A DNA stretch of 64,000 nucleotides, taken from positions 186,001 to 250,000 of IMG/VR virus record IMGVR_UViG_3300020172_001601; one strand, 5' to 3'. The number at the start of each line of letters is the position of its first letter. Position 1 is the stretch's first letter. A model generated the notes under the pieces. That model saw only the letters and a list, made by a program, of their open reading frames with translations, was not told where the DNA came from and did no database searches. This document shows positions 31,463-48,541 of this stretch, in pieces. The position numbers were made by a program, and so were the translations under genes.

Positions 31463-31755
31463 AACCTCAAAAAAAGTTCGACATGACGATCCGAGATAAG
31501 TCCCAGGTCGCTCATGACGGTCAACATAGACATGGCAATGAACATGCCACGATTGAAGTTGAAAACGAAGGCTTGAGGTTGGTCGCCCGCCACATAAAAG
31601 TGAGCGGGTGCTTGCCTTTGCCGATAACGCCAGATATGCAGTTGCCGCTCCATTTTGAAATGAACAGTGACATGACGGGGTTGGCAACTGTCATTTGCGG
31701 GATATGCAGGAAGAAACTCGGCACTTGTTCCGTCAGACACATAAAGAAGAAATAA
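31459..31755 (+). CDS. hypothetical protein with DGQHRH motif
   Basis: ATGA-coupled; CxxC near C-end. Confidence 0.65.
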   Translation: MKPQKKFDMTIRDKSQVAHDGQHRHGNEHATIEVENEGLRLVARHIKVSGCLPLPITPDMQLPLHFEMNSDMTGLATVICGICRKKLGTCSVRHIKKK

Positions 31756-32093
31756 TGTCCAAAGTATATCACGACAAGCAATTTCCCGCCATTGAAGCAC
31801 AGGAGCGTAAGTTCCCTGATGACTTCGTGGAAGTCGCTGAGTGTGCTACTGAAGACTTGGGTGAGATATTCCAACTCACGAATCACATTGACAAAGCATG
31901 GTGGTTGAACGAGGGCGTTCTCAAGACAGTTGATGCCCAAATCCGATCCACTTCGGTTGGTGATGTTGTAGTGCTGTCGGAAGGCACTGCGTATGTTTGC
32001 CGTACTTTGGGTTGGACCGCTATTGGCAAAGTCAATGACGGCCCATTGCCCCTTGTGTTCACAACCGGGATGGGAATATTCGATGGACAATAA
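31755..32093 (+). CDS. hypothetical protein
   Basis: TAATG-coupled; RSTSVGDVV motif. Confidence 0.7.
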   Translation: MSKVYHDKQFPAIEAQERKFPDDFVEVAECATEDLGEIFQLTNHIDKAWWLNEGVLKTVDAQIRSTSVGDVVVLSEGTAYVCRTLGWTAIGKVNDGPLPLVFTTGMGIFDGQ

Positions 32094-32535
32094 TCAAAAT
32101 CATTCCAAGCCATTGCCTAAATGGACCGAGAAACTGTTTGCCTTGATTCACAAGCATTGGCAGTATCACGCTCCATGTGTGCATATCAACATTCAGGCGT
32201 TCTTTGACCATGAAAATAAGGTGTGGCAGGTGAAGGCCGCACCTGTATATCAGGAGGTCTACGGGGGCGACGAGGATGGCAAGAAGGTATGGGCTGGGTT
32301 CGTCTTCGACATGGGAGACTTCAGCCGAGAAACCGGCGTATGGATTCAAGAATACGCAATTTCCTCTTTCTGTCTGGAGTGTACGCAACACCCAAAATTG
32401 ATGGCACGAGGTAAGTTCCAAGGCCATCAGATGTTCTTGCATATTTTCTTGGAGCCGGTCGCCGAAACTGATGCTGTTGAAGTGATCGACACCATTCAAC
32501 AGGAAATTCGGGACATGCCTGATAGGGAAGAATGA
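32083..32535 (+). CDS. hypothetical protein
   Basis: Overlap-coupled ORF. Confidence 0.7.
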   Translation: MDNNQNHSKPLPKWTEKLFALIHKHWQYHAPCVHINIQAFFDHENKVWQVKAAPVYQEVYGGDEDGKKVWAGFVFDMGDFSRETGVWIQEYAISSFCLECTQHPKLMARGKFQGHQMFLHIFLEPVAETDAVEVIDTIQQEIRDMPDREE

Positions 32536-32960
32536 TGCAAGAGCCTGAACTAGAAGAAATGTTGAATGAAATGACTCTCGATGAACGAGAGGCCCAAGTA
32601 TTATTGGGTGGGCGTCTTTGGACGCCCAAGCCCGATTATATTCAATATTTTCCTCAGACCCTATACACTGACGCCGAACTGGTGGACGCTTTTGTTGATA
32701 CCACATACACTTGGTATGCGGATCAAACAAACACCATGTACGGCTGGCAAGATGAAGTACGGGCAGAACTGATTCGCTGCCTTGCAGAAAACGACGAACC
32801 AGAATCGACCCACCAGTTAATCTATGCTGAAATGAAATTCAGCAAAGAGTGGACAGGTCCAGAAGGAATGTTCACGGAATACCACCCGAAAGGAATGCTT
32901 GATGTTATATGCAAAACTGAAAGAGCGATTGACGCAGGCCATGAAAGCCAGCGACACTAG
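32532..32960 (+). CDS. hypothetical protein
   Basis: ATGA-coupled ORF. Confidence 0.65.
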   Translation: MMQEPELEEMLNEMTLDEREAQVLLGGRLWTPKPDYIQYFPQTLYTDAELVDAFVDTTYTWYADQTNTMYGWQDEVRAELIRCLAENDEPESTHQLIYAEMKFSKEWTGPEGMFTEYHPKGMLDVICKTERAIDAGHESQRH

Positions 32961-33378
32961 CGCCAAGAACGCCGTGCGAGCGGTGCTGTCGAAACTTCAA
33001 ACCTCCGGTCAAGAAACCGACGAGGCTGTGATTTCTTCTGTCAAGATGCTCATCAAGCAAAATGAAGAAGAAATTGAGACACGCAATGGTCGAGTCAAGA
33101 TGGCTGACGGTTCCATCAAGGAAGTTGCTATCTCCGGCCAGGAGAATGAGATCGCACGTCTCAATGCTGAGATTGTGGTCTACAACGAGTTCTTGCCTGA
33201 CTTCTTGAGTGCCGACAAGATCAAAGAGATTTTGGCCTTGCCGCTCCACCAGTCGCAGATCAACGCCGCCAAGAATGCTGGTGCTGCTACGGGTGTTGCC
33301 ATGAAGATTCTGAAGCCGCATGGTGCGGTGGAAGGTGGCACTGTCAAAGACGTTGTTGCTGCTATTTACGGGCAATAA
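32902..33378 (+). CDS. YqeY/GatB C-terminal-like (tRNA-binding) protein
   Basis: LKERLTQAMKASD..VRAVLS..E..VYNEFLPDFLSADKI..G.AMKIL..VEGGTVKDVV. Confidence 0.75.
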   Translation: MLYAKLKERLTQAMKASDTSAKNAVRAVLSKLQTSGQETDEAVISSVKMLIKQNEEEIETRNGRVKMADGSIKEVAISGQENEIARLNAEIVVYNEFLPDFLSADKIKEILALPLHQSQINAAKNAGAATGVAMKILKPHGAVEGGTVKDVVAAIYGQ

Positions 33379-33659
33379 TGAAGGACAATATCATGAGCGA
33401 CACACCAGATAATGTCAAAGAAATTGCTTTGTATGCGTGGCTTGGCGAAGATGAGTTCGGCTCTGGTGTAGTCGGACTCAAACAGGCATTAGTGCCTGCT
33501 GGGATGATCCCTTTGGTTGCGGTGGATAACAACAAGATCGACAGGGAATATATCCGACAGGCCATGCAAGCACAGGCTAATGCCTATGGCAAAACCATAC
33601 GCTTCTGCAAATTCACTTTTGTAGAAGAAATCATCACGATTGAACCGGAGAAGAAGTGA
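33378..33659 (+). CDS. hypothetical protein
   Basis: TAATG-coupled ORF. Confidence 0.7.
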   Translation: MKDNIMSDTPDNVKEIALYAWLGEDEFGSGVVGLKQALVPAGMIPLVAVDNNKIDREYIRQAMQAQANAYGKTIRFCKFTFVEEIITIEPEKK

Positions 33660-34342
33660 TGTTTGGAGCAATGGGCAGCATACGAAAAGACAAAATCCCC
33701 GAAGGAACCAAAGTGGATACTTTGCATTTGCCCGGCATTGCCGAGCGTAGCAACGAATCTTTGGTTGTGCAGGGGAGAGACACCAGTAAACTTCATTTGA
33801 TTGTGGATATGAGCCGCATCGGTGCGGGTCTATTCAACGTCAAGATGGAATATACTTACTTCGCTCCCAGGTCGGGCAGGAACTACCTGTTTGAAATGGT
33901 GATGATGCGGTGGCCGGACGCCAATACTTTCTTGTGGGCTATTGCTTCGTTCCCCATCGAGTATCGGCCCCAGGCTGAAGCGATGGCGAAAGAGTGTGGT
34001 CTTCGGTTGGCTGATGGCATTCCTACCATCTTCGATCATAAAGGCGCACACCAGTTCCCATTGGAAGGCCCTACGGTCTTTACCCTTGAGAACGTCAATG
34101 GTCATCAAGTGTATGGAAATGACAGAGATGCAGTCGAGAAACTGAAGAAGGAAGAACACGCCGCTATTGATGCCATCATCGGTGCTGATCGGGCCAAACT
34201 TCATGCTGAAATGAAGGGGCAAGGCTACACCGATGAACAGATCAAACGTATCCTGAATCATTGGGAATCAGGCGACGAAGCATATGACGAGCCGCCAGCC
34301 GCAGCCAGTGATGGTCAGCATCGTCACAAGGCTCCGTTGTAA
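33656..34342 (+). CDS. hypothetical protein ending SDGQHRHKAPL
   Basis: GTGA-coupled 228-aa ORF. Confidence 0.75.
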   Translation: MMFGAMGSIRKDKIPEGTKVDTLHLPGIAERSNESLVVQGRDTSKLHLIVDMSRIGAGLFNVKMEYTYFAPRSGRNYLFEMVMMRWPDANTFLWAIASFPIEYRPQAEAMAKECGLRLADGIPTIFDHKGAHQFPLEGPTVFTLENVNGHQVYGNDRDAVEKLKKEEHAAIDAIIGADRAKLHAEMKGQGYTDEQIKRILNHWESGDEAYDEPPAAASDGQHRHKAPL

Positions 34343-34377
34343 GAAATGTGCCTAACATTGGCACTAAGGAATGTACT

Positions 34378-34590
34378 ATGTCCGTCGAGAAGTTCAGCAA
34401 AGCCTTTGGCATTTACCATTGGGATACGTTCGACAACGAAACGATCCTGATTGGCGAAGCCGATACGCTTGTAGAAGCACAACAATTCGTTCAAGAGAGG
34501 TACAAGGGTAGGCTTGGTTCCGATGGAGCAGATCGAGTTGATATTGTAGATCAACTTGGCGAAGTTGTGGACCATTATTCAACCCGGTAA
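34378..34590 (+). CDS. hypothetical protein
   Basis: AAGGA SD. Confidence 0.65.
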   Translation: MSVEKFSKAFGIYHWDTFDNETILIGEADTLVEAQQFVQERYKGRLGSDGADRVDIVDQLGEVVDHYSTR

Positions 34591-34602
34591 GGTGGGTGTA
34601 GC

Positions 34603-34839
34603 GTGAATGACTTTCAAAGATATTTTGCTCAAAAGAATCGTGCTGCCACTTTGCCACAAGTCAGAGTGAGCAAGGACGAATTTGTTCGTCGTCTTGTACT
34701 GCAAGGCGAGTCACAAGACAAAGCAGAGCAGATGGCGATGGTCGCCGAGTCATTGGGAAGCCGTATCGAAATAAACAATGAAATGGTCGGCATCAACACC
34801 AAGTACGATGAACTTTTGGAGTCTTCGACCAATGACTGA
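34603..34839 (+). CDS. hypothetical protein
   Basis: Packed ORF. Confidence 0.6.
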   Translation: MNDFQRYFAQKNRAATLPQVRVSKDEFVRRLVLQGESQDKAEQMAMVAESLGSRIEINNEMVGINTKYDELLESSTND

Positions 34840-35278
34840 CAAAACCGAGTTTGAAAAGATTGGCGTGAATACTATTCGCCCGTTCAAGTCGAACGGGCGA
34901 TGGGTGTTTAAGCACAACAATCAAACATACGATATGGCTCCAGCCGGTATTATGGATACCGTATTGAGTCCGTTGGTTATTGGCGCTGATCGGTTGATCG
35001 CTCTCGGCTGTCAGATGAAAGGCATACCGAATCCTGAAGCTGGCTTTAATTTGTTGTTTTCGGAAGAATATTTTCCGAATGCCGATGTTAAGTTCAACTT
35101 CTTGGAAGTCAAGCATAGTGGCTGGATTTATGCCGTTGAGGAACTGAACCTCAAAGGCTTAATGCCCGGTCAATCTGCCTGGATTTGCCCGTACATGACG
35201 TTCTATTACCCTCAGCCGCCCAAGACGTTATATCTCAAGGTCGAACCATTGGAGTCTGGTGATGGAATTCCTGAGTGA
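34832..35278 (+). CDS. DUF6717-like protein
   Basis: IRPFK..RWVF..GAD..FNLLFSEEYFP..GWIY..WICP..PPKTLY. Confidence 0.6.
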   Translation: MTDKTEFEKIGVNTIRPFKSNGRWVFKHNNQTYDMAPAGIMDTVLSPLVIGADRLIALGCQMKGIPNPEAGFNLLFSEEYFPNADVKFNFLEVKHSGWIYAVEELNLKGLMPGQSAWICPYMTFYYPQPPKTLYLKVEPLESGDGIPE

Positions 35279-35585
35279 CGGCCAGCATCGGCACGGCGGC
35301 GAGAGAATGAACTGTTTCTTCTGTGTCAAACAGAAACAGAACTGTCAGTTGTTCCGATTGGGCGAAAATCCTTCTCATCCTCCTGAGTATGCAGCACTAT
35401 ATAAACAAAGATTTGTCATCTGTCCAGAATGCCATGCAAGAGGGCCAAAACATCTTGCACAGCATTTGATGCACTGGATAAAGGTACAAGGGTTCTTGGC
35501 CGATCACGGTGTTGGACTCCCCGAAATTGAACGACATAAGACAACCGGGGAACTGCCTATGCTCAATAAGAGGAAAAAAAGATGA
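35262..35585 (+). CDS. CxxC hypothetical protein beginning MEFLSDGQHRHGG
   Basis: GGAG SD 7 nt before ATG. Confidence 0.6.
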   Translation: MEFLSDGQHRHGGERMNCFFCVKQKQNCQLFRLGENPSHPPEYAALYKQRFVICPECHARGPKHLAQHLMHWIKVQGFLADHGVGLPEIERHKTTGELPMLNKRKKR

Positions 35586-36082
35586 AGTGCTTCGTTCACG
35601 TTGGGTTTGACCCTAAACCCCACGAGGCTGACGACCCCGCTGAAGCAATAAGTTTGGCCGAAAGGCGATTGCTTGCCAGCAATGAAGGAGAAGAGGAACA
35701 TTTACCCGTCAGATGGAGACGGGATGATTTATATCCAGATAACTTTCTGGAATACACACAAGACCAACTGGTATCTCACCTAAGCCAGAAGGGTGAAGTT
35801 GTTTTGCAACTCGCCGAACTCGATTCGGACGGCTTGCCAATTATGGGTGAAATTGCTAACATCTTTACGGCTTCTGAAGAAGAGAAGAACGCACAAGAAG
35901 CTGATGAGGCTTTGGAAAAATTGTTGGCGATTGATTCCGCAGTTGCCTCCACTTACAAAAAGCCCAAGTCGTTACCAAGAGCAAAGCCCAATCCTCCTGG
36001 AAACAAACAACGTGTTCTCAACAAACGAACCATGAAGCCTAACACGAGGCGTGTCAAGCGAAGAAGCAATCCATCCAATTAA
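35582..36082 (+). CDS. hypothetical protein with basic tail
   Basis: ATGA-coupled ORF. Confidence 0.7.
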   Translation: MKCFVHVGFDPKPHEADDPAEAISLAERRLLASNEGEEEHLPVRWRRDDLYPDNFLEYTQDQLVSHLSQKGEVVLQLAELDSDGLPIMGEIANIFTASEEEKNAQEADEALEKLLAIDSAVASTYKKPKSLPRAKPNPPGNKQRVLNKRTMKPNTRRVKRRSNPSN

Positions 36083-36092
36083 GGACAGAATC

Positions 36093-36560
36093 ATGGGTCG
36101 TGAGGACTATGAAGTTTTTAAGCTCTTGCAGCAAGATCGAATTCAAGAGGGCGCTGAACGGCGTGCGGTGAGCAATAACGAGTTCGGCGCAGCCAGTCAA
36201 TTGGCGACTCAATCAGGGATGACTCTTGTTCGTCACAGCGAGGTTCACTATCAATTGCGAGGTCAAGCTGGTTGGTTGCTCAACATCTATCCGGGCAATC
36301 GCAGGCTGTATCATGACCGTAATAGACCCAAGCCACCATACTTGAAGGTTGATCCTAATTGGACTCTTATTGACATTGTTCGCACCGCTATTGCTGCATC
36401 GAACAATACAGATTCCTTCGCTAAGGAAATCGCCAAGAGGGTTGTGACCGACGATCAAATCCAGATTCGTGCTTACTACTTGTGGGAAGCGGCTGGTTGT
36501 CCTGGTGGGGACGGCAAAGATTTCTGGTTCCAGGCAGAGAAAGAGATGCGAGGCCAATAA
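36093..36560 (+). CDS. DUF2934 domain protein
   Basis: IQIRAYYLWEAAGCPGGDGKDFWFQAEKE. Confidence 0.8.
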   Translation: MGREDYEVFKLLQQDRIQEGAERRAVSNNEFGAASQLATQSGMTLVRHSEVHYQLRGQAGWLLNIYPGNRRLYHDRNRPKPPYLKVDPNWTLIDIVRTAIAASNNTDSFAKEIAKRVVTDDQIQIRAYYLWEAAGCPGGDGKDFWFQAEKEMRGQ

Positions 36561-37087
36561 TGGACTTGTTGTGTTTATCATTGGCTACTGATATGACAGA
36601 CGCCGAGATCAAGGAGTGCATTCAGGAAATGATTCCTGTATGCACTGTTAAGGGTCAAGGATTTTGTTTAACCATCAGTGGATACGATGACGACCATCGT
36701 GAATTGTGGCAGATTCCAGAGGCCCTTGGCTTCATGAAGCGTCTTTGTGACCTGGGATTTATATCCACACTCGAAGTGTCTACGACCTGTCCCGATTTAT
36801 TGCGGGAAGAATACAAGATCGACAAATTGCCCGGCTTTGGCGCACTCGAAGTCTGGATGTGTGCCACCAATAGAATGGGTACGGGCAAGAACGATATTGA
36901 TAAAGCAACTATGGATTCATTTCAAGAAGACCTTGGCATCTCCAATAGGCGTGCTGAAGCAGTAATGAAAGAACCATCCTACCGAACTGGCATCAAGAAG
37001 TCTGGTTATCGAACACAAATACCAGATGCCTCAATCAAACACCACGGCTTCAATAAAGATCGTGGTCCCCGTTGGAAACCCAGGTGA
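36560..37087 (+). CDS. hypothetical protein
   Basis: TAATG-coupled ORF. Confidence 0.7.
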   Translation: MDLLCLSLATDMTDAEIKECIQEMIPVCTVKGQGFCLTISGYDDDHRELWQIPEALGFMKRLCDLGFISTLEVSTTCPDLLREEYKIDKLPGFGALEVWMCATNRMGTGKNDIDKATMDSFQEDLGISNRRAEAVMKEPSYRTGIKKSGYRTQIPDASIKHHGFNKDRGPRWKPR

Positions 37088-37090
37088 TAT

Positions 37091-37300
37091 ATGATCCCAA
37101 CAATCACTGACTCCAGAGATATGGTGATGCTTCGGTGTATGACCAATTGCACAATTGGTGGTAGAATCACTTTGCCGTCTGGTTTGGAAATTCCACCACC
37201 ACCAGCAGGCAAAGTGTGGCACGTCAATAACGGCGTCATCACCGAACAAACCAAACAAGAAAAGCGGCACGATCACTGCCATACTTGCAAAAGGCGATAA
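37091..37300 (+). CDS. small hypothetical protein
   Basis: Packed ORF. Confidence 0.55.
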   Translation: MIPTITDSRDMVMLRCMTNCTIGGRITLPSGLEIPPPPAGKVWHVNNGVITEQTKQEKRHDHCHTCKRR

Positions 37301-37301
37301 C

Positions 37302-37679
37302 ATGCAATACCGGACACGGAAGCTGGTAAAGCCCGGCGATCTCAATGGCGAAAATACACTCTTCGGTGGCCGTCTCATGGAGTGGCTTGATGAAGAGTGT
37401 GCGATATATGCTATTTGCCAACTTGAATCAACAAAGTTGAGAACCAAGATCATTGGCGAGATTGATTTCAAAGCTGCCGCCCATCAAGGCGAAGTAATCG
37501 AGATTGGTGTAGAGGCAATTAAATTTGGCACCACCAGTCTCACCATGCGTGCTGAGGTTCGTAACAAAACTACTAAACAGGTCATCGTCACAATTGACAA
37601 GATTGTGATGGTAATGGTGGATGAAAATGGAAAGCCAACACCCCACGGAAAAACTGCTGTCAAAGCCGAGGTCAATTAG
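37302..37679 (+). CDS. acyl-CoA thioesterase (hotdog fold)
   Basis: VKPGDLNGENTLFGGRLMEWLDE..EIDFKAAAHQGEVIEI..GTTSL. Confidence 0.85.
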   Translation: MQYRTRKLVKPGDLNGENTLFGGRLMEWLDEECAIYAICQLESTKLRTKIIGEIDFKAAAHQGEVIEIGVEAIKFGTTSLTMRAEVRNKTTKQVIVTIDKIVMVMVDENGKPTPHGKTAVKAEVN

Positions 37680-37680
37680 T

Positions 37681-37953
37681 GTGACAGGTTGTTTGTCCCC
37701 CTTCAGGGATGGACAACCTTGTTTCATTCAGATGCCCGGCAACCCACATTTTTGGGTTGCAGTTTTTACCACAAAAGATAAACTGGAAGAATCGTGTGCC
37801 GACCTTGGCATTACAGATTACACCATTAAGCAAGTGACTGATGGAAAAGATTTCATCGAGTCAATTGTTGAAGGTGGCGTAAGGATCATGCTTGATCCAT
37901 ATGCAGTTAGGAGTGAGAACAAGACTCGTTGGACAGAAATCATATTGGAGTGA
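37681..37953 (+). CDS. hypothetical protein
   Basis: GTG directly after previous stop. Confidence 0.6.
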   Translation: MTGCLSPFRDGQPCFIQMPGNPHFWVAVFTTKDKLEESCADLGITDYTIKQVTDGKDFIESIVEGGVRIMLDPYAVRSENKTRWTEIILE

Positions 37954-37955
37954 CC

Positions 37956-38264
37956 ATGAACGAACCGTTTAATTACACCGTGGTCATTCGTGGCCTTGAC
38001 GGTGTTCCATTGAGGACTACTTCTCAAGGCGCAAAAGCATTGATGAAGTCTTTCCATGAAGAACCCAATATGGAACAACTCTTGTTGGAAGCGGTGGACT
38101 CCGGTACGCCGTTCAAGAACAAGCTGGTCAGCGTTACTGCTGTGTTTCCACGTCCAAAGATCAAACAAGCCACTGTTATGACAGCGGCGGTTGCTGCGAA
38201 GGCCAAAGCAGCACCGAAGAAAGCTGTTAAGAAGGCCGTCAAAAAAACCACTAAGAGGAATTGA
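37956..38264 (+). CDS. hypothetical protein with histone H1-like AKK tail
   Basis: C-end AAKAKAAPKKAVKKAVKKTTK. Confidence 0.7.
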   Translation: MNEPFNYTVVIRGLDGVPLRTTSQGAKALMKSFHEEPNMEQLLLEAVDSGTPFKNKLVSVTAVFPRPKIKQATVMTAAVAAKAKAAPKKAVKKAVKKTTKRN

Positions 38265-38268
38265 ACAC

Positions 38269-38562
38269 ATGGCGAAGGTTACAGTAACATTTGAAGACAT
38301 TGACGAAGGCGTAAGCGTCAAGGTTGAATCGGACCCAGCATTTCCCGGTCCTGCGGCTACTCAAGAGGAACAAGACAGCCTCACTGACGCCCAACAAATG
38401 GGTTTGCGTATGACTCACCTATTGACCGAAGAAATGGCGTCCCAAGAAGGACACCATCATGAACACGACCACGATCATGAACACGACGAACATTGCACCC
38501 GCCATCACCATGCCGCCGAGGTTCCGAGCGACGGGACGCCTGCGGTACAGTCCAACGAATAA
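38269..38562 (+). CDS. hypothetical protein with His-rich tail
   Basis: GAGGA SD; GHHHEHDHDHEHDEH. Confidence 0.7.
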   Translation: MAKVTVTFEDIDEGVSVKVESDPAFPGPAATQEEQDSLTDAQQMGLRMTHLLTEEMASQEGHHHEHDHDHEHDEHCTRHHHAAEVPSDGTPAVQSNE

Positions 38563-38938: not shown

Positions 38939-38968
38939 AAGAAGGGGACGTGCCGACACGTCCCCTTC
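38937..38968 (-). terminator. intrinsic terminator oriented on minus strand
   Basis: GAAGGGGACGTG-CCGA-CACGTCCCCTTC 12-bp stem; T-tract only on minus strand. Confidence 0.7.
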
Positions 38969-39003
38969 AAGCGTTTAATGTGATTATATCCTTGGTGGAT
39001 ACT

Positions 39004-39010
39004 TATATAG
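39004..39010 (-). promoter_or_regulatory. class III (late-type) motif CTATATA on minus strand
   Basis: About 35 nt upstream of the minus-strand terminator stem. Confidence 0.4.
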
Positions 39011-39039
39011 CTACTCGATCTGTAAATCTGCGGATCGGC

Positions 39040-41610: not shown

Positions 41611-42181
41611 TCTCGTCGGCCAAGGGTATTATCTCTTGGACGTTGGGATCGTGGATTCCAAAACACTGCGACAACGCATGTTTGAAGTCAAAGATAAGCT
41701 GAGTGAGTTTGTTCCATTTGGCTTCCGGTCAATGGCTCGATTCGACCAGCAAGAAACCACACGCTACCACCAAGATGGTGGCCCTGATCTCAATATCCTG
41801 ATGCTTGGCTATGAATCATCCAAGGTCAAGAGCAGGCTGTTCATTGCAGACCATGTGTGCGCTGCCAATGATATTCGAGAGATTCCACCAATCAAGGTGA
41901 CGCCCGAATACATCATCACCGAAGCCCTGTTTGGCCGTGATGAACTATTGGACTTCTACACCAGTGAACTGCCTCAACCCAAAGAAGGACACTCATACAT
42001 TCTGCTCATCAATAACTCCAAAGAACTTGGAGTATTGCACAAGGCTATTGTTGAGAAGAACCCAAGCGAACGACGCATCATTAACTCGATCATGCTCTCG
42101 GTAGGCGAAGACGAAGTTGGCATTGAACAACAACAAGACTTCCTTACTACAGACAATATCAGCGAAAAGTCATATGACTAA
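41576..42181 (+). CDS. hypothetical protein, possible Fe(II)/2OG-like HxD...H fold
   Basis: RYHQDGG..LINNS..VLHKA..RRII; tentative. Confidence 0.4.
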   Translation: MKSIFDQVWRNNLVGQGYYLLDVGIVDSKTLRQRMFEVKDKLSEFVPFGFRSMARFDQQETTRYHQDGGPDLNILMLGYESSKVKSRLFIADHVCAANDIREIPPIKVTPEYIITEALFGRDELLDFYTSELPQPKEGHSYILLINNSKELGVLHKAIVEKNPSERRIINSIMLSVGEDEVGIEQQQDFLTTDNISEKSYD

Positions 42182-42776
42182 GAGAGGCCACTTCCCAGGC
42201 AACAACATCTACAGAGGCTTCCGAATTATTCGGGAAGACTCGGTGTTGATTGTAAGCGACTCAATATCCTTCAGTGATGTTGAGTCCGCTATACGCAAGG
42301 TATTGAAGTGCATAAACGGCAAATGCTCCAATCGGCGTATTGAATTTCCAGACGATGAAACAATTGAATCTGTTGTCAATAATAGTATGGGGCTTTATGC
42401 CCTATATGGTCCCGTACCAGAAGTCAAAGGGCAAACATCACGTCTTGCTATTGCATGGTGGACTGATGACAATTTAATCAAACATTTGAGAGTCTTCGGC
42501 GACCGTATTCATTGCACCGAGCCGCACGCCGAAGTGCCTCGATTGTATTCTTTTGGACACGAATCCTATTATGTCATCTACCCTACTAATCATCCTCATC
42601 ATTGTCTTCATTGTAAATGCCAACTCAAGAAGGGCGAGGGAACGTGGCATAAGAATGAGAAGGAGATCGACCCGATGGAAATAGAGCCAATAATTGCATA
42701 TTTCTTATGCAATGGCTGTCAATACGAACACGACACGGGTTTCCGGCAAGGCAATTTGAGAAAAAGAGCTAGATAA
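42174..42776 (+). CDS. hypothetical protein
   Basis: Overlap-coupled ORF. Confidence 0.65.
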   Translation: MTKRGHFPGNNIYRGFRIIREDSVLIVSDSISFSDVESAIRKVLKCINGKCSNRRIEFPDDETIESVVNNSMGLYALYGPVPEVKGQTSRLAIAWWTDDNLIKHLRVFGDRIHCTEPHAEVPRLYSFGHESYYVIYPTNHPHHCLHCKCQLKKGEGTWHKNEKEIDPMEIEPIIAYFLCNGCQYEHDTGFRQGNLRKRAR

Positions 42777-43431
42777 ACTTCTCGCCGAATCGCAATCCGC
42801 AATTAGTTGGATTGGGTAGGTTGTTGTATCCTGAGTTGTATAATCCCACATGCTCGACCAAACTAGGTGCGGCATAATAGCAATCCAATCCTTGATGTAA
42901 AAAGAATTCGCCCAATACAGCATCAGCGGCGAACCACTCGGTATTGAGCTTGGGTGCCTTCGAGAACAACTCCATTGATTTACGTTGCATCACAATGCAC
43001 TGACACCCCCATGTGTCCCAGCCTCGATTGATTCTTGCCCAGCCATGATGCTTTTGTAGCCAAGGCCATGTTTTCACATATGCTTTCGGAGTATACGCTG
43101 AGATAAAACCTATTTGCTTTCTAATTGATGAACATAATCCAGCTATGTGTTTCATTGTGTCTGGCGCACACAATATGTCATCTTCTGCGAACATATACCA
43201 CGGCTCATTGCTTGTTTCCAACAAGCGTTCCATGTTGATCTTCCACTGTTGACAATTTCCAATAGGAGCCTTGTTGTAAAAGATTTCAACATTGTCATGT
43301 TTGCCAATTATCGCACCAGGATCAGCCGAAATGTTTATTTTTTGACTGAAACCACTATGTCGCAATGATGAAATGGTGTTGTCAATAGTAGGCACTGGAC
43401 GGGTGCCGGTAATCACAGTGATCGCTATCAT
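42769..43431 (-). CDS. glycosyltransferase family 2-like protein
   Basis: YMFAEDDIL (DxD-type), WGCQC, AADAVLG, SLVEHVG; AGGAG SD. Confidence 0.7.
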   Translation of the reverse strand: MIAITVITGTRPVPTIDNTISSLRHSGFSQKINISADPGAIIGKHDNVEIFYNKAPIGNCQQWKINMERLLETSNEPWYMFAEDDILCAPDTMKHIAGLCSSIRKQIGFISAYTPKAYVKTWPWLQKHHGWARINRGWDTWGCQCIVMQRKSMELFSKAPKLNTEWFAADAVLGEFFLHQGLDCYYAAPSLVEHVGLYNSGYNNLPNPTNCGLRFGEKFI

Positions 43432-43487
43432 TTGAAGTTCTCCTGGATATATAAGAGTAGGCTATTAGCCGAAGACAAGGAGGTTTT

Positions 43488-43988
43488 ATGCGTCACTGGA
43501 TTTTAGCTTTGTTTGTATTGTCTATTGCAGGTTGTCTGCCTACGGGCCAATCTCAATATGACCCGGTTGATTGGAATTCTCAGGCACCACCAATGCCAGA
43601 GAAGCCACAGCCGACCCCAGAAACCCATGAAGTACCGGCTACGTTACAAGCCCTATTAAAGCTCCACAATGAGCAACGTGAGCTTAAAGGGCGTCCCGGT
43701 TTTCAACTTGACCCATATCTTTGCAAATACGCTCAGAACCACTCAGACTGGATGGCAAAGAAGAATAACTTAAAGCACTCAGACATTGGTGCCTTAATGG
43801 GCAAGTATTCAACAGCAGGTGAGAATATTGCCTGGAATCAAAAAACAGAAGCCGAAGTGGTAGATGCGTGGATGCGCTCGTCGGGCCACAGAGCGAATAT
43901 CATGAACCGAGCGTTCACCAAAGTTGGCTTTGGTGTGGCGTACAACAGTAATGGTGAGCCATATTGGTGTACATGCTTTGGTGGCTAA
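43488..43988 (+). CDS. CAP/SCP domain lipoprotein
   Basis: Lipobox IAGC; LHNEQR..AQNHSDWMA..GENIA..WMRSSGHRANIM..VGFG; AAGGAGG SD. Confidence 0.9.
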   Translation: MRHWILALFVLSIAGCLPTGQSQYDPVDWNSQAPPMPEKPQPTPETHEVPATLQALLKLHNEQRELKGRPGFQLDPYLCKYAQNHSDWMAKKNNLKHSDIGALMGKYSTAGENIAWNQKTEAEVVDAWMRSSGHRANIMNRAFTKVGFGVAYNSNGEPYWCTCFGG

Positions 43989-43993
43989 TGCCG

Positions 43994-44021
43994 GGCCAGT
44001 GATGAAAGTCGCTGGCCTTTT
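43994..44021 (+). terminator. intrinsic terminator
   Basis: GGCCAGTGA-TGAAAG-TCGCTGGCC TTTT. Confidence 0.7.
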
Positions 44022-44028
44022 CTATATA
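44022..44028 (+). promoter_or_regulatory. class III (late-type) motif CTATATA
   Basis: 5 nt before ATG 44034. Confidence 0.6.
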
Positions 44029-44033
44029 CATTC

Positions 44034-44474
44034 ATGCCAATCTTGAAATTCAAACAATGGATATGCGAATCAGCCGACTTCCCGGAGCCTGAAGACCTCA
44101 GTGCGTTCCTGTCTCATGCGGCTACGGTTTGTATTCGCACCCACCAAGAAATGTTCAAGATGGCCCAAACTCAAAAACAAAAGGATTTGGTGGGCGAAAT
44201 AAGCAGCCTTGGTGAATTACTTCAACATATCCATCAGAGTTTGGAAGACAAAATTCCAAATGAGCCATTCGATACTGACAAGTTTCAAGGCAGACCGTCT
44301 CCGACATTGAATAAGCCGCAATATCCCATCAAATATCCTACGTTACAGTCGATCATTCCCATTCTGAGAACTATCGGCGGCAACCCAGCCATCGACAAGC
44401 CAACTTCGCAGGCTCTTTCCGACAAAATCCAGTCGTTGATGCGTGCTTGGAAATCTGCTTTACAGCAAAGCTGA
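44034..44474 (+). CDS. hypothetical protein with capsid-targeting-like N-terminus (MPILKFKQWICES)
   Basis: ORF plus class III motif. Confidence 0.7.
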   Translation: MPILKFKQWICESADFPEPEDLSAFLSHAATVCIRTHQEMFKMAQTQKQKDLVGEISSLGELLQHIHQSLEDKIPNEPFDTDKFQGRPSPTLNKPQYPIKYPTLQSIIPILRTIGGNPAIDKPTSQALSDKIQSLMRAWKSALQQS

Positions 44475-44487
44475 AATACGGTAGAAT
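44459..44487 (+). promoter_or_regulatory. class I promoter
   Basis: TTTACA-N17-TAGAAT. Confidence 0.7.
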
Positions 44488-44502
44488 CTGCTGCAAGGAA
44501 CG

Positions 44503-44901
44503 GTGGAGCCGAACATGGGATGGAAATGGTGGGCGAAGACATATTTCAAAGTGCTTTTCAGCCGTGATTTATGGCTTTCGACCTTTTTCGTCATCTTGGA
44601 AGTCTTGATGGTTCTCGGCTGTTTTGACAGCGATAGATTTCGACAACAACCAGTCATCCATGTTTCCATGTGCCTTGGAAGCCTTTTCGCCCTTGCGGTC
44701 ACATTCACGACCCTGGGGATTGTTCAGGCTTATATCACACACAGAGGTAAAGAGAAGTTTCGTCTTGAACGTGAGCGGCGGGAACAGGAATTTCAGGACC
44801 GAATTCGTCAGCCAGTGCCTATACCAGAGCAACCACCAGAGCCAGAAATCAGTCCGTGGCTTTTAGGTGGTTGGGATAAACATTTGACTAAGGGTGAATA
44901 A
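44503..44901 (+). CDS. two-TM membrane protein
   Basis: Hydrophobic segments. Confidence 0.65.
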   Translation: MEPNMGWKWWAKTYFKVLFSRDLWLSTFFVILEVLMVLGCFDSDRFRQQPVIHVSMCLGSLFALAVTFTTLGIVQAYITHRGKEKFRLERERREQEFQDRIRQPVPIPEQPPEPEISPWLLGGWDKHLTKGE

Positions 44902-45506
44902 TGCCTGCTGAATCCAGTAATGCACAAGGATACGGACTCGTTTTGGTCCCACAGCCACCGATGGTCAGGACCATCTTTTTCGCTGAAGGTGGCAAGCGGC
45001 AGTTGTCCTTTCCTTATACTCTATTCGGGTTGTTCTATTTTAGAACCCCTGAATACAAGTATCACTTGAAGCGACTGCATGTTATTTTTGGACAGAAGCC
45101 ATTTACCGGCACCGATCTGACCGAAGAGTTCTTCGGCCTGCCTCTCCGTAATCACGACGGCGCATTTGCCACCTGCTTCTATCAGTGGGACGTGGAACAG
45201 ACGGCTGAGAAGTTCGCCGAGAAGATCATCGGCCAGTATTGGATGAGTCCTTACGCCGAATATAACGATTGGGCATCATGGTGGACCAATCGTTATGGCG
45301 CTCTGAATCCCAATTTCCTCAAGCAGTGGCAAGAAGCTACCGATAAGAAGGACTATGACTTCATCATGAACGAGCCTTTGCTCAAGGCCGATCACCACGT
45401 TAATCTTGGGAAATTGCTCGAAGCCAATAAGAGCCATTATTCCCAAGGCGGTATTGAAGTCGTGACCCTTGGACCCAAACTGGATTTGGTTAAGGAAATC
45501 GAATGA
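44901..45506 (+). CDS. prokaryotic E2 family D-like protein (paralog of 863..1534)
   Basis: VRTIFF..LSFPYTLF..LHVIFGQKP..LPLRNHDG..C..YWMSPY..QWQEAT. Confidence 0.5.
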   Translation: MPAESSNAQGYGLVLVPQPPMVRTIFFAEGGKRQLSFPYTLFGLFYFRTPEYKYHLKRLHVIFGQKPFTGTDLTEEFFGLPLRNHDGAFATCFYQWDVEQTAEKFAEKIIGQYWMSPYAEYNDWASWWTNRYGALNPNFLKQWQEATDKKDYDFIMNEPLLKADHHVNLGKLLEANKSHYSQGGIEVVTLGPKLDLVKEIE

Positions 45507-45727
45507 CCCGCTTCTTTTACTATTCCGTGGCTAAGTTGCCTGGGGACATGACTCCAGATGAATTGGAACAAGAAATCACAGCAGCACTTCAATACGAAGA
45601 CCGCTGCCGTGAGATCGGCCAAGGCGTCAACACAAAGGAATCGCTCCGTAAACGATCCTGTGAGTTGGAGTTAGTCAAACACCCAAATGGTATCGACCGC
45701 TGGACAGCACTTGTGGTAAACGTGTAA
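45503..45727 (+). CDS. hypothetical protein
   Basis: ATGA-coupled. Confidence 0.6.
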   Translation: MTRFFYYSVAKLPGDMTPDELEQEITAALQYEDRCREIGQGVNTKESLRKRSCELELVKHPNGIDRWTALVVNV

Positions 45728-45729
45728 AA

Positions 45730-46092
45730 ATGGAACTAAAGACTCTTGCATCCGAAATGACGGCGCAAGCTGAGGCAATGCCAATGACCATCGAACGTAT
45801 GATGGAGGGCATTGCCTCGCAGTCATTTCCAGCCGAGCTTAAACGCAAAGAAACAATTGATGGCATTGGTGCTGTTCAGGTGCAATACAGCCATGACCAT
45901 CTAAGTCCCGGCAAATACATTAAGCATTTGTCTTTTTCACGGGATGATTTGGAACGTCCAAGTATTGAAGTCCAAAAGGCGTTTCAAGAAGCGTTCTTTG
46001 ATAACAACAAAGATATTCTCGAACTGCCCTCAACCCTGCCATATGTCATTCAGATGGCAAGACTGGTGAGTTTCGATGTTCGCAATAACTGA
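45730..46092 (+). CDS. hypothetical protein
   Basis: Packed ORF. Confidence 0.65.
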   Translation: MELKTLASEMTAQAEAMPMTIERMMEGIASQSFPAELKRKETIDGIGAVQVQYSHDHLSPGKYIKHLSFSRDDLERPSIEVQKAFQEAFFDNNKDILELPSTLPYVIQMARLVSFDVRNN

Positions 46093-46390
46093 ATTCACTG
46101 AAGGCAAATATTATCTGCTCACTGGCTCAGGAGAGAAGTGGTCGGACTATGATGGCCCATTTGACACTGCACGAGAAGCCGTCCAGCACATGGCTGTATT
46201 GTGCGGTGAATACACGACGCCAGAAATGGTGAATTCTGCCGTATTGACATACTTCAGCAATAACATGCTGGACTTGTTGAAAGACGACAACGGTAGCCCA
46301 ATCAACGGCAACCAAATTTACTGGAAGAACACCATCTGGAAGGATGGGGAAATCATTTGGGAAGGTAGCGATGCACGATCCAACACATGA
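46076..46390 (+). CDS. hypothetical protein
   Basis: Packed ORF. Confidence 0.6.
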   Translation: MFAITEFTEGKYYLLTGSGEKWSDYDGPFDTAREAVQHMAVLCGEYTTPEMVNSAVLTYFSNNMLDLLKDDNGSPINGNQIYWKNTIWKDGEIIWEGSDARSNT

Positions 46391-46664
46391 ATACGATGAT
46401 AACTGCGAAGGTTGTCAGCCAGCGATGATGGACATAAAGACTGGCAAGCCAATGGAGCAAGACCATCCTGTAATGGTTGCTCTTATGAAGGCTTGGAGGG
46501 AAAAAACTACGTTGACTGAGCGTCGTGCGACCAGCCGGGTATGGATGGGACAATCCCAAAACCCCATTGATTTTGAAATCATGCACAGGGTCGGCGGCAT
46601 CATTCAAAAGGCCATAGACGAGGTTGAAGGCAATGCAAACGAAGTTCATGGAAGTGACGAATAA
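46371..46664 (+). CDS. hypothetical protein
   Basis: GAAGG SD. Confidence 0.65.
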   Translation: MHDPTHEYDDNCEGCQPAMMDIKTGKPMEQDHPVMVALMKAWREKTTLTERRATSRVWMGQSQNPIDFEIMHRVGGIIQKAIDEVEGNANEVHGSDE

Positions 46665-47001
46665 CAACAAGAATTGGGGCAAGTTCCTGCTGTTTCGTTT
46701 TGACAACGAATGGCAATACAAGTCTGCATTCACTGGTCGTTCGTTGCTTCATGAAGTTGGTTGGAACCAAGAGAATATTTTCGTCTTGGACCTTCAAACT
46801 GGCGAAGGCGCTCGATTCATGCCCGGTGGCCTCGCCAGTGCTGATTTGGATAAACACAAAATATGGGTTTGTCCAATGTACGAGCCTTTCTTAAACTGGC
46901 TCTACAGACAAAACTTGGAAGACCTTACCAAGTTGCCTGACTCCCTGGATATTCCAGAGGCAGAGTTCGCAATGAGAGGCTACAGAAGGGGCGGCAAATG
47001 A
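46633..47001 (+). CDS. hypothetical protein
   Basis: Packed ORF. Confidence 0.7.
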   Translation: MQTKFMEVTNNNKNWGKFLLFRFDNEWQYKSAFTGRSLLHEVGWNQENIFVLDLQTGEGARFMPGGLASADLDKHKIWVCPMYEPFLNWLYRQNLEDLTKLPDSLDIPEAEFAMRGYRRGGK

Positions 47002-47321
47002 ATCAGCCTGATCTGCACCATGAAGGCCCGCTCACCGTTGAATTGGTGCGTGGCCTCATGGACAAACTCAAAGTGGCATTGGATGAGATTGTGGCGTTCG
47101 TCCCGCCTGATGCCGATATTGAATGGGTGTTCTGCAAGAGCAATTGGGCAGAGGCACTGCAATATGCAGGCATTCGCTGTGCCGCCATATTGACGAAACT
47201 GGAATGCCAAATTGAATATCGCCTGGAAGACGATCACAAGAGTATTGACATTACTTTGTGTATTCTTCGAGACTATGAAGCAGCTAAGGCAAAGGGGTTC
47301 GAGCGTGATAACAACGTATAA
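46998..47321 (+). CDS. hypothetical protein
   Basis: ATGA-coupled. Confidence 0.65.
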   Translation: MNQPDLHHEGPLTVELVRGLMDKLKVALDEIVAFVPPDADIEWVFCKSNWAEALQYAGIRCAAILTKLECQIEYRLEDDHKSIDITLCILRDYEAAKAKGFERDNNV

Positions 47322-47511
47322 CCCAAAGACAGGCAAATGGGAACCTGAATCCAAAGAGGACGTTCTCAAAAAAGAAGACATTGAAGGCAATAGGCCCTGC
47401 GATCTATGCTGGGAAGCAGCCAGAGATCAAGGCGTTTATTCTTTCCCATTGAAGGAAACAGTTACACTAAAGCGATGCCCTTGTGGTCGCATGATTGGAG
47501 TTGAAAAATGA
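47305..47511 (+). CDS. small hypothetical protein
   Basis: CDLC..CPC; start approximate. Confidence 0.5.
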   Translation: MITTYNPKTGKWEPESKEDVLKKEDIEGNRPCDLCWEAARDQGVYSFPLKETVTLKRCPCGRMIGVEK

Positions 47512-47738
47512 CCGATCAATGGTGGTGTTCGAGTTGCCCAAAGTGCAAAGAGAAAAATTGGATCAACAATGGCGATCCATCTGATATGACCGCAATGGAT
47601 GTAGAGGGCATTCGTTGCTGGAATTGCAAGCACTGTTGGCGGCTGTCCGAGGAATTGGACTACGCCGACGAAATGGAAGAAGACGACGATCCGTACTACG
47701 AGGATGGCCGTCACTTTGTAGAGGTCAAACACGAATAG
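47508..47738 (+). CDS. zinc-ribbon small protein
   Basis: CPKC..CWNC; GGAG SD. Confidence 0.65.
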   Translation: MTDQWWCSSCPKCKEKNWINNGDPSDMTAMDVEGIRCWNCKHCWRLSEELDYADEMEEDDDPYYEDGRHFVEVKHE

Positions 47739-47767
47739 TTTACAAGTCTTTTAATGCGTGGTAGAAT
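47739..47767 (+). promoter_or_regulatory. class I promoter, likely leaderless
   Basis: TTTACA-N17-TAGAAT, ATG 5 nt later. Confidence 0.75.
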
Positions 47768-47772
47768 CGGCT

Positions 47773-48162
47773 ATGAAAACACTCACCACTGAAAACATGG
47801 GCGTTTACGTCGGCGGGCAGGTTGAAATCCTGGGGACCGGCGCAAACGAATACCGATACCGAGGTCAGATCAGCAAGATCGAAGTGCTGCCTGAGCCTGA
47901 ACGACCAAAGCCGGTCGGCGCAGGTCAAGACGCCACGCTTCATGTTGAGTTCGAGTACATCTGCGAATTCAAACATGGCGAGGGATACAAGCCGTCCGAG
48001 AATAAGCCGTATGATCTTGGGCTGCTTATTTGCGCACCGAGCGATATAGGCATGGATCGGCTTTGCATCAACTCCAGTATCCTTGGTGAAATGGCGATCT
48101 TTTACCCGCCCGCCCACAACAAGCGGGTGTTGCCAGATGGGGATATGGAACACAATGAGTAA
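47773..48162 (+). CDS. hypothetical protein
   Basis: ORF directly after promoter. Confidence 0.7.
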   Translation: MKTLTTENMGVYVGGQVEILGTGANEYRYRGQISKIEVLPEPERPKPVGAGQDATLHVEFEYICEFKHGEGYKPSENKPYDLGLLICAPSDIGMDRLCINSSILGEMAIFYPPAHNKRVLPDGDMEHNE

Positions 48163-48541
48163 AGTTCGACTCGATATTGGTCGCCCTTCGCCTATGCCCG
48201 GTCGGTATCGCCCTGATTATTGGGTGGTTCGACATGAAGGCACGCTTATTGTTAGATACAATAGCGACCTTAATCGTTTCGGATGGGAACGGCTGAAGGC
48301 AATCGCCGAGAAAGCCCTCAAAGAATGCGACCTGTGGGACTCACACGGTACGCATCGTGCCGAGATCGGCAATCTTGATGGCATTCTCTATATTGCCTTC
48401 CCCATTAAAGACCCTGATGGCAAAGTCAACGTCTGCATTGAAACGCAGGCAGGCTTTGAATCAGGCTTGGGCGTTAAGCTGTCTGACCTTGCGGAGTTCA
48501 ATTACATTAGCGACGGACAACACAAACATGGCAATAACTAA
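48155..48541 (+). CDS. hypothetical protein ending SDGQHKHGNN
   Basis: Overlap-coupled ORF. Confidence 0.7.
   Translation: MSKVRLDIGRPSPMPGRYRPDYWVVRHEGTLIVRYNSDLNRFGWERLKAIAEKALKECDLWDSHGTHRAEIGNLDGILYIAFPIKDPDGKVNVCIETQAGFESGLGVKLSDLAEFNYISDGQHKHGNN

What the first reader, a model, noticed from the sequence alone, without database searches (positions are those of the whole stretch)
31516..48529. DGQH(R/K)H peptide near the termini of four unrelated proteins
Seen: HDGQHRHG (31516-33, N-terminal region), SDGQHRHK (34310-27, last 10 aa), SDGQHRHG (35277-94, first 12 aa) and SDGQHKHG (48512-29, last 9 aa). DNA differences fall mostly at synonymous positions (GAC/GAT, GGT/GGC/GGA, CAA/CAG, CAT/CAC, AGA/CGT/CGG), so the peptide rather than the DNA looks conserved, and the host ORFs are otherwise dissimilar. 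Three exact hexapeptide hits in roughly 20,000 codons is far above rough chance expectation. Inference: an unrecognised short linear motif, such as a metal-binding HxH tag, docking or localisation signal, degron, or substrate site for a phage enzyme.
Basis: partly seen in the sequence, partly recalled or inferred. Interest (0 to 1): 0.7.

Follow-up and report, generated by a model that had tools for sequence, protein, structure and literature searches.

The report
Shared peptide tag on huge-phage proteins
A short peptide, roughly [D/E]-G-Q-H-[R/K]-H-G, sits on the floppy ends or an exposed loop of at least eight unrelated proteins in one group of freshwater huge phages and is kept by selection, so it is most likely an address tag read by a common partner that has not been identified.

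Summary
The window lies in a 340-kb huge-phage record. DGQH[RK]H occurs four times in the window and a fifth time elsewhere in the genome, and a sixth protein carries EGQHKH in an internal loop. About 0.006 occurrences are expected by chance (P ~1e-13). All six are in-frame on the coding strand. The six host proteins share nothing else, and the DNA differs at synonymous sites.

The peptide is conserved in homologues: 26 of 33 for protein B, 16 of 21 for C, about 25 of 32 for F, and also in relatives of A and E. The neighbouring linkers vary in sequence and length. Other homologues simply stop before the motif or start after it. Relatives add two further carrier families. AlphaFold models place the motif in a coil tail and a low-confidence loop.

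The consensus is phi-x-[DE]-G-Q-H-[RK]-[HFY]-[GK]. The last His is often Phe or Tyr, which argues against a strict metal-binding tag.

This is a real, lineage-restricted, modular short linear motif. Its reader is unknown. The phage's own complete ClpX is the leading candidate but is untested. One complex prediction, DUF6717 with C, gave no answer. I found no published description.

The parts
31459..31755 (+). Carrier A, a 98-aa ORFan. The motif AHDGQHRHG is at 31516-31533, residues 20-25 in the N-terminal region. The start ATG overlaps the stop of the upstream ORF (ATGA).
   Evidence: The ortholog in L019 (60% identity) keeps AHDGQHQHG. Strain variants 31518 C>T and 31528 A>C are both synonymous. 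No Pfam or PHROG hit.
33659..34342 (+). Carrier B, 227 aa: a globular alpha/beta domain, two helices and a coil tail. The motif SDGQHRHK is at 34310-34327, and 4 aa separate it from the stop.
   Evidence: 35 homologues were found and 33 aligned, and 26 of the 33 keep [DE]G[QSAP]H[RKQH]H after a variable linker. AF2 mean pLDDT is 87, and the tail 204-227 is coil with pLDDT falling from 73 to 43. No known fold.
34832..35278 (+). DUF6717 gene, listed as context and not a carrier. It lies between B and C, overlaps the start of C by 17 nt, and is one of the best-conserved genes of the region. It was tested as a candidate reader.
   Evidence: Pfam PF20475, E 4.5e-6. 76 homologue clusters. Synteny. 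Also present in outgroup phages that lack the motif. Complex prediction with C scored 0.24, below the 0.32 mark, which counts as no answer.
35262..35585 (+). Carrier C, a 107-aa zinc-ribbon protein (CFFC...CPEC). The motif SDGQHRHG is at 35277-35294, residues 6-11.
   Evidence: 16 of 21 representatives (27-64% identity) keep DGQ-H-x-[HFY]-G at the N-terminus. Outgroup members start MEIEFS with no motif. In run X11 a strain replaces the 31 nt before 35277 and resumes exactly at the motif.
48155..48541 (+). Carrier D, a 128-aa ORFan. The motif SDGQHKHG is at 48512-48529, and 3 aa separate it from the stop.
   Evidence: The start overlaps the upstream ORF by 8 nt. The same 128-aa product is on record letter for letter. 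No homologues found. No Pfam or PHROG hit.

Best explanation
The motif phi-x-[DE]-G-Q-H-[RK]-[HFY]-[GK] is a modular short linear docking motif.

Shown here:
- It is displayed on flexible N- or C-terminal tails or an exposed loop of at least eight unrelated proteins.
- It is confined to one sub-lineage of freshwater and sediment huge phages.
- It has been gained or lost gene by gene.
- It is held constant by selection on the peptide.

Inferred: all carriers are read by one common partner that binds the motif wherever it is exposed, so the tag addresses a changing set of small accessory proteins, plus the conserved tandem-ACT-like protein F, to that partner.

My best single guess for the partner, at only about 0.2, is the phage's own complete ClpX unfoldase. 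It has an N-terminal zinc-binding domain, GYVG and RKH pore loops and an MGF ClpP-docking loop. No phage ClpP was found in the part of the genome held. On that reading the tag would be a private recruitment or degron-like signal for remodelling or timed removal of these proteins through the host ClpP.
For: - Enrichment: 5 exact copies against 0.0065 expected.
- Position: all copies are in coding frames near termini, or in the loop of F.
- Independence: the carriers are unrelated apart from the motif.
- Conservation in five families: B 26 of 33, C 16 of 21, F about 25 of 32, one A ortholog, one close E relative.
- Two further carrier families in relatives: L019 4052-4453 and L023 2129-2494.
- Modularity: some B homologues end before the tag, others extend 30 aa past it. 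The E homologue in L046 ends just before it. C of the outgroup lacks it.
- Linker against motif: strains change the linker by substitutions and indels while no listed change falls in the B motif, although that list was truncated. Both variants inside motif A are synonymous.
- Disorder: the B tail is coil and the F loop has pLDDT below 50.
- Lineage restriction: none in about 950 kb of outgroup huge phages, which also lack the F and B families.
- ClpX candidate: zf-C4_ClpX, AAA_2 and ClpB_D2-small domains with GYVG, RKH and MGF loops. No ClpP was found. From established knowledge, ClpX signals occur at either terminus of unrelated substrates, and the ClpX zinc domain binds short peptides of adaptors and substrates.
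Against: - No reader was identified. The only complex prediction allowed (DUF6717 with C) gave no answer, and ClpX could not be tested.
- ClpX, the 555-aa AAA protein and DUF6717 are also present in outgroup phages without the motif, so none co-occurs specifically with it.
- The tag lies 3 to about 30 aa from the chain end and is internal in F, unlike classical pore-engaged ClpX degrons.
- Its polar sequence resembles no known ClpX signal. This rests on my own knowledge and was not tested.
- The genome held is only about 69% complete.
- D has no homologues, so its translation is inferred.
Confidence: 0.6

Rival explanations
1. The motif is a substrate site for a phage enzyme, a post-translational modification site rather than a docking site. 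One example is ADP-ribosylation of the invariant acidic residue by the phage's PARP-like enzyme, reversed by its ADP-ribosylglycohydrolase.
For: - The genome encodes a PARP catalytic domain with WGR, an ADP-ribosylglycohydrolase and NUDIX. Relatives also carry NADAR.
- Carrier F sits inside this conserved neighbourhood.
- Position 0 of the motif is always Asp or Glu, 15 to 14 in family F.
- Exposed tails and loops are typical modification sites.
Against: - Only F is near these genes. The other carriers lie 46 kb or more away.
- Nothing links the enzymes to the motif, and no test was possible.
- ARH-type hydrolases are not the usual erasers of Asp/Glu-linked ADP-ribose. This rests on my own knowledge.
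Confidence: 0.12
2. The motif is a cargo-loading or capsid-targeting peptide. The tag would bind the inside of the procapsid or a scaffold, so that the tagged small proteins are packaged and injected with the DNA. This would work like the T4 capsid-targeting sequence or encapsulin cargo-loading peptides.
For: - It is a short conserved peptide on flexible linkers at either end of unrelated small proteins, the same layout as encapsulin cargo-loading peptides.
- The carriers are small accessory proteins of a huge phage.
Against: - No structural gene is linked to the carriers.
- The capsid gene was not identified in the 69% of the genome held: five of the largest ORFs, four of them in 310-340 kb, have no PHROG hit.
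- The internal loop copy in F, a conserved tandem-ACT-like protein, fits poorly.
- Nothing was tested.
Confidence: 0.1
3. The motif is a metal-binding tag. Asp and two His would chelate Zn, Ni, Fe or Cu, either as a buffer or to bridge tagged proteins.
For: D-x-x-H-x-H gives three classical ligands. D and both His are invariant in the 26 tagged members of family B.
Against: - The last His is Phe or Tyr in 9 of 21 C-family representatives.
- The first His is Asn, Tyr, Thr or Phe in several C and F members.
- Gly and Gln are as conserved as the His residues, and Gly and Gln are nearly invariant in F.
- This pattern fits a shaped binding epitope better than a chelate.
Confidence: 0.08
4. The motif is a cleavage site for a phage maturation protease, which would trim short terminal peptides and cut F between its two halves.
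For: Terminal position. Residues beyond the motif are short and unconstrained.
Against: - Removing 3-4 C-terminal residues has no obvious purpose.
- F is modelled as one compact fold (pTM 0.86), with the motif in a hairpin loop at the start of its second half.
- No protease was linked to the motif, and no ClpP-type protease was found.
Confidence: 0.05
5. The motif is a chance recurrence, a DNA repeat, or a remnant of a shared ancestral domain, with no function of its own.
For: The motif is only 6-8 residues long. The genome does contain DNA repeats that create recurrent hexapeptides.
Against: - P is about 1e-13.
- The DNA is not conserved and the codons differ.
- There is no similarity outside the motif.
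- The motif is conserved in orthologues while the adjacent linkers drift.
Confidence: 0.02

Closest known systems
ClpX recognition signals and ClpX N-domain docking peptides (ssrA, MuA and lambda O tags; SspB XB tail)
   Same: Short peptides at either the N- or C-terminus of many unrelated proteins, read by one machine. This phage encodes a complete ClpX.
   Different: The sequence is unlike any of the known classes. The tag is not at the extreme terminus and is internal in one carrier. ClpX also occurs in relatives without the tag. Binding is untested.
Sliding-clamp binding motifs (bacterial QL[SD]LF, PIP-box, C-terminal peptides of T4 gp43, gp33 and gp55)
   Same: A hub-docking short motif on flexible termini of unrelated proteins, including in phages.
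   Different: Clamp motifs are hydrophobic and sit on replication and transcription proteins. This motif is polar and His-rich and sits on ORFans. No clamp link was found.
Encapsulin cargo-loading peptides and the T4 capsid-targeting sequence
   Same: A conserved terminal peptide after a flexible linker, portable between unrelated cargo proteins, in an HK97-fold shell system or a phage.
   Different: There is no genomic linkage to a shell or capsid gene. The consensus differs. One copy is in an internal loop. Packaging is untested.
Viral short-linear-motif mimicry in eukaryotic viruses (for example LxCxE and PxxP)
   Same: Rapid gain and loss of a short motif on disordered parts of viral accessory proteins.
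   Different: Here the motif is not known from any host protein. The host is unknown.

Membership tests
Short linear motif (SLiM) in the general sense | 3-10 residues, conserved as a peptide while the flanks and codons vary | tested here: met
   Alignments A2, A3 and A4 and the position counts. Synonymous codon use.
Short linear motif (SLiM) in the general sense | Located in a disordered or exposed region | tested here: met
   AF2 models: the B tail 204-227 is coil with low pLDDT, and the F loop 110-114 has pLDDT below 50. These are predictions only.
Short linear motif (SLiM) in the general sense | Independent occurrence in unrelated proteins, with evolutionary gain and loss | tested here: met
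   At least eight carrier families with no other similarity. Homologues occur with and without the tag.
Short linear motif (SLiM) in the general sense | A defined binding domain or enzyme that reads it | tested here: inconclusive
   DUF6717 with C scored 0.24 against a mark of 0.32, which counts as no answer. No other candidate could be tested.
ClpX degron / ClpX N-domain ligand | A ClpX is available in the same system | tested here: met
   The phage ClpX has a zinc finger and GYVG, RKH and MGF loops.
ClpX degron / ClpX N-domain ligand | Signal at the extreme N- or C-terminus (pore-engaged classes) | tested here: not met
   The motif lies 3 to about 30 aa from the C-terminus or 5-19 aa from the N-terminus, and is internal in F.
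ClpX degron / ClpX N-domain ligand | ClpX-dependent binding, unfolding or degradation | not testable with these tools
   This needs biochemistry.
Metal-binding HxH / His-rich tag | Invariant metal-ligand histidines | tested here: not met
   The last His is Phe or Tyr in 9 of 21 C-family representatives. The first His is Asn, Tyr, Thr or Phe in several.
Clamp-binding motif / PIP-box | Consensus Qxx[LIM]xx[FY][FY] or QL[SD]LF with hydrophobic anchors | tested here: not met
   The consensus phi-x-[DE]-G-Q-H-[RK]-[HFY]-[GK] lacks the hydrophobic pattern. The known consensus comes from my own knowledge.
Cargo-loading / capsid-targeting peptide | Carriers are packaged in the shell, and the gene is linked to the shell or structural module | not tested
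   No capsid gene was identified in the 340 kb held. There are no virion data.
Dispersed DNA repeat or mobile-element footprint | Conservation at the nucleotide level, on both strands or in any frame | tested here: not met
   The copies share only the 18 nt, with synonymous differences. All are in the coding frame of the + strand.
Paralogous protein family | Similarity beyond the motif | tested here: not met
   All-against-all BLASTP aligns only 7-10 residues. The models of B and F differ.

The most novel reading that the evidence does not exclude
The peptide is a private addressing code of a huge-phage lineage. On this reading it is a portable tag that the phage adds to or removes from accessory proteins. 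The tag would hand them to one phage-encoded machine. That machine could be the phage's own ClpX, which would redirect the host ClpP to phage-chosen substrates for timed destruction. It could also be a loading receptor that packs the tagged proteins into the capsid for injection. Either way it would be a new recognition signal with no sequence precedent.
Probability: 0.25. Interest if true: 0.8.

Novelty: new variant of a known kind. Interest (0 to 1): 0.6.

Why it matters
Huge phages encode hundreds of small proteins of unknown function. A conserved, portable tag shared by at least eight of them offers a direct experimental handle. A single peptide pull-down could identify a hub of the infection programme and group otherwise unconnected ORFans into one pathway.

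If it is a capsid or compartment receptor, it would be a natural cargo-addressing tag. A 7-9-residue tag that works at either terminus or in a loop would also have biotechnological use.

Tried and rejected
- **Split gene or target-site duplication.** I considered that B and C were halves of a gene split around the inserted DUF6717 gene, with the two motif copies as a duplication. Rejected: the B and C families are independent, the C of the outgroup has no motif although DUF6717 sits beside it, and the DNA of the two copies differs.
- **F as a HIT/GalT-type enzyme whose HxH is the motif.** Foldseek's top PDB hits had E about 2e-3 and TM 0.34. This was not upheld. AFDB clusters and the ESM Atlas point to tandem ACT-like domains at TM about 0.5, and VIA-align gave Z of 5.9 at most.
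- **DUF6717 as reader.** The complex prediction gave no answer. DUF6717 is also present in phages without the motif.
- **Co-occurrence screen of candidate readers.** ClpX, the 555-aa AAA protein and DUF6717 were searched in outgroup records. All are present there, so none is specific. Only family F shares the motif's distribution.
- **Searches of IMG/VR for carriers.** Families B and D were not found.
- **The 462-kb relative.** It could not be scanned as a whole.
- **Families, folds and literature.** Pfam and PHROGs gave nothing for carriers A-F. PDB sequence searches with two tail segments gave nothing. The literature holds no paper with the motif or with DUF6717.
- **Fold searches for B.** No known fold.
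Full report
**What the window is.** The window is bases 186001-250000 of a single 340,341-bp virus record with 47.8% G+C. CheckV rates the record about 69% complete. An identical copy of protein B lies on a 390-kb contig. Most long ORFs are on the + strand. The genome encodes:
- a family-B-type DNA polymerase;
- an SNF2 helicase, a ParB-like protein and methyltransferases;
- a class-I aminoacyl-tRNA synthetase, a MetRS, an NAD-dependent DNA ligase, Ro60/TROVE with vWA, a PARP catalytic domain with WGR, a CCA/polyA-polymerase head domain, RNA ligases and a ClpX.

No phage in the INPHARED collection is close to it. Relatives are metagenomic huge phages from freshwater and sediment.

**Checking the observation.**
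- A: 31516, residue 20 of a 98-aa ORF.
- B: 34310, with 4 aa between the motif and the stop of a 227-aa ORF.
- C: 35277, residues 6-11 of a 107-aa ORF.
- D: 48512, with 3 aa between the motif and the stop of a 128-aa ORF.

In the whole genome there is a fifth exact copy, E, at genome 97523, 4 aa before the stop of an 83-aa ORF. There is also a near copy, F (SEGQHKHG), at genome 174302 in the middle of a 207-aa ORF.

All six are on the coding strand and in the frame of an ORF. Those ORFs show translational coupling to a neighbour or a good Shine-Dalgarno sequence. From the six-frame amino-acid composition, 0.0065 copies are expected, so the P for five or more is about 1e-13. The 18-nt stretches differ at third positions and between Arg codon families, and the flanks do not align. 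BLASTP among the six proteins aligns only the motif. The other recurrent hexapeptides of the genome are true DNA repeats outside the window.

**Is the peptide under selection?**
- **Family B.** 35 homologues were found and 33 aligned (50-82% identity). 26 of the 33 carry [DE]G[QSAP]H[RKQH]H at the same place, after a linker that varies in sequence and length behind a conserved YDExP. Five end before the motif, and several continue 10-30 aa beyond it.
- **Family C.** In 21 representatives at 27-64% identity, 16 keep DGQ-H-x-[HFY]-G a few residues from the start, just before a conserved zinc ribbon.
- **Family F.** In 32 sequences down to 42% identity, the motif sits in a variable-length loop between two conserved halves. 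Gly and Gln are nearly invariant.
- **Families A and E.** The A ortholog in a relative keeps AHDGQHQHG. A close relative of E keeps TTDGQHRHSSLN, while a 52% homologue ends just before the tag.
- **New carriers.** Relatives add two families: an ORF ending VRDGQHRHGDHT (L019 4052-4453) and an ORF ending YDGQNKHGK (L023 2129-2494), with no homologue in the window.
- **Strain variation.** Strains about 90-97% identical show two changes inside motif A, both synonymous. They also show substitutions and indels in the linker just upstream of motif B, with no listed change inside the motif, although that list was truncated. One strain replaces the 31 nt in front of motif C and resumes exactly at its first codon.

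The pooled consensus is phi-x-[DE]-G-Q-H-[RK]-[HFY]-[GK].

**Structure.**
- **B.** The AlphaFold2 model has mean pLDDT 87. It shows a globular domain, two helices and a coil tail from residue 204, with pLDDT falling from 73 to 43. The motif is at 218-223.
- **F.** The model has mean pLDDT 88 and pTM 0.86. It is two beta-beta-alpha-beta-beta halves, with the motif in a hairpin loop whose pLDDT is below 50.
- **Fold of F.** It resembles tandem ACT domains such as those of GlnD, at TM about 0.5. The weak Foldseek PDB hits to GalT were not supported by VIA-align.
- **Fold of B.** It has no known fold. Its only clear relative is an uncharacterised 160-aa protein that lacks the tail.

No carrier hits Pfam or PHROGs.

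**Distribution.** Outgroup huge phages whose DNA polymerase is 53-71% identical total about 950 kb, and one of them is 91% complete. They contain no DGxHxH at all. The pattern search does recover the copies in the own genome. These outgroups also lack families B and F. They do keep the local synteny of helicase, DUF6717 and C, and there C starts MEIEFS with no tag. Within the tagged lineage, loss is gene-specific: contigs whose B lacks the tag still carry a tagged F. The motif is therefore a lineage-restricted, portable module.

**What it does.**
- *Shown:* it is a peptide-level conserved, exposed, position-independent motif that has been acquired repeatedly by unrelated proteins. That is the signature of a short linear motif read by a common partner.
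- *Not shown:* who the partner is.

The conservation pattern gives some guidance. Asp/Glu, Gly and Gln are as constant as the two His. The last His is freely replaced by Phe or Tyr. This fits a shaped binding epitope with an aromatic or imidazole anchor better than a metal chelate.

Candidate readers encoded by the phage:
- **ClpX.** It is complete, with an N-terminal C4 zinc domain carrying a 13-aa insert, a GYVG pore loop, an RKH loop and an MGF ClpP-docking loop. No ClpP was found in the 340 kb held. By established knowledge, ClpX reads short signals at either terminus of unrelated substrates, and its zinc domain binds short adaptor and substrate peptides. That is why I rank it first.
- **A 555-aa AAA protein**.
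- **The PARP-like and ADP-ribosylglycohydrolase pair**, near F.
- **DUF6717.** This highly conserved gene lies between carriers B and C and overlaps the start of C.

Against these candidates: ClpX, the AAA protein and DUF6717 all occur in outgroups without the tag. The tag is not at the extreme terminus. The single complex prediction available, DUF6717 with C, scored 0.24 against a mark of 0.32, which the tool itself says is no evidence either way.

The rivals are a modification site (0.12), a capsid cargo tag (0.10), a metal tag (0.08), a protease site (0.05) and chance or a DNA repeat (0.02).

**Comparison with known systems.** In layout the motif works like clamp-binding peptides, ClpX tags, the T4 capsid-targeting sequence or encapsulin cargo-loading peptides. 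It fails the sequence definitions of the clamp and ClpX classes and the invariant-ligand test for a metal tag. The packaging definition could not be tested. I found no paper that mentions the motif or DUF6717. PDB sequence searches with two tail segments returned nothing. I file it as a new variant of a known kind, a viral short linear docking motif, with an unknown reader.

**Limits.**
- All relatives are metagenomic fragments.
- The genome held is incomplete.
- D has no homologues.
- The structural statements rest on predictions.
- The co-occurrence argument rests on one near-complete outgroup genome and several fragments.

Noticed in passing
Outside the window: genome 149835-151265 (L031:5835-7265): The phage encodes a complete ClpX homologue. 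It has a zinc finger with a 13-aa insert and GYVG, RKH and MGF (IGF-type) loops. No ClpP was found in the 340 kb held. Homologues at 53-69% identity are in outgroup huge phages.
   Followed up: partly
Outside the window: genome about 160-180 kb (L031, L032, L002); relatives L043 and L044: A conserved neighbourhood of ADP-ribose and RNA-repair genes. It holds PARP with WGR, a 555-aa AAA protein, an Rnl1-like RNA ligase carrying DUF2934 and a piece like the L7/L12 C-terminal domain, an ADP-ribosylglycohydrolase, a second RNA-ligase-like gene, carrier F and DUF4139. NUDIX genes were seen only in the relatives, and NADAR only in L044.
   Followed up: partly
window 34832-35278 and 35262-35585: The DUF6717 gene overlaps the start of carrier C by 17 nt. 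The pair stays adjacent in relatives (L016, L019, L023) and in the outgroup G001, where C has no motif. In L023 the gene upstream of DUF6717 ends with the motif, so there DUF6717 is flanked by tagged ends on both sides.
   Followed up: partly
window 35246-35276 (run X11): A related strain replaces these 31 nt, which are the end of DUF6717 and the first codons of C, with 87 other letters. It realigns exactly at the first motif codon, 35277.
   Followed up: no
Outside the window: genome 339.4-340.3 kb, 184-1685, and 267-293 kb: Three repeat features. A 33-bp tandem repeat of about 26 copies lies inside the last ORF, at the contig end. GNQ-rich repeats lie at about genome 184-1685, mostly within ORF 596-1966. 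A dispersed DNA repeat of about 19 copies lies between 267 and 293 kb, where gene orientation is mixed.
   Followed up: no
window 32899-33378; 25354-27558; 9843-11015; 20179-21531; 61979-63433; 43488-43988; 36051-36560: Other annotatable genes of the window are a YqeY/GatB-like protein, an SNF2 helicase, a ParB-like protein, two methyltransferase-domain proteins, a CAP-domain protein and a DUF2934 protein. The last two are annotated through 74-90% identical relatives.
   Followed up: partly
L016 7700-7754 (relative whose B is 82% identical): Carrier A seems to be missing or reduced to fragments in this close relative, while B and C keep their tags. This is an example of fast turnover of carriers.
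   Followed up: no
Outside the window: genome 104332-106077 (L001:14332-16077): A Ro60/TROVE protein with a vWA domain lies 7 kb from carrier E. vWA MIDAS sites bind acidic residues of peptide ligands, so this is one more untested candidate reader.
   Followed up: no
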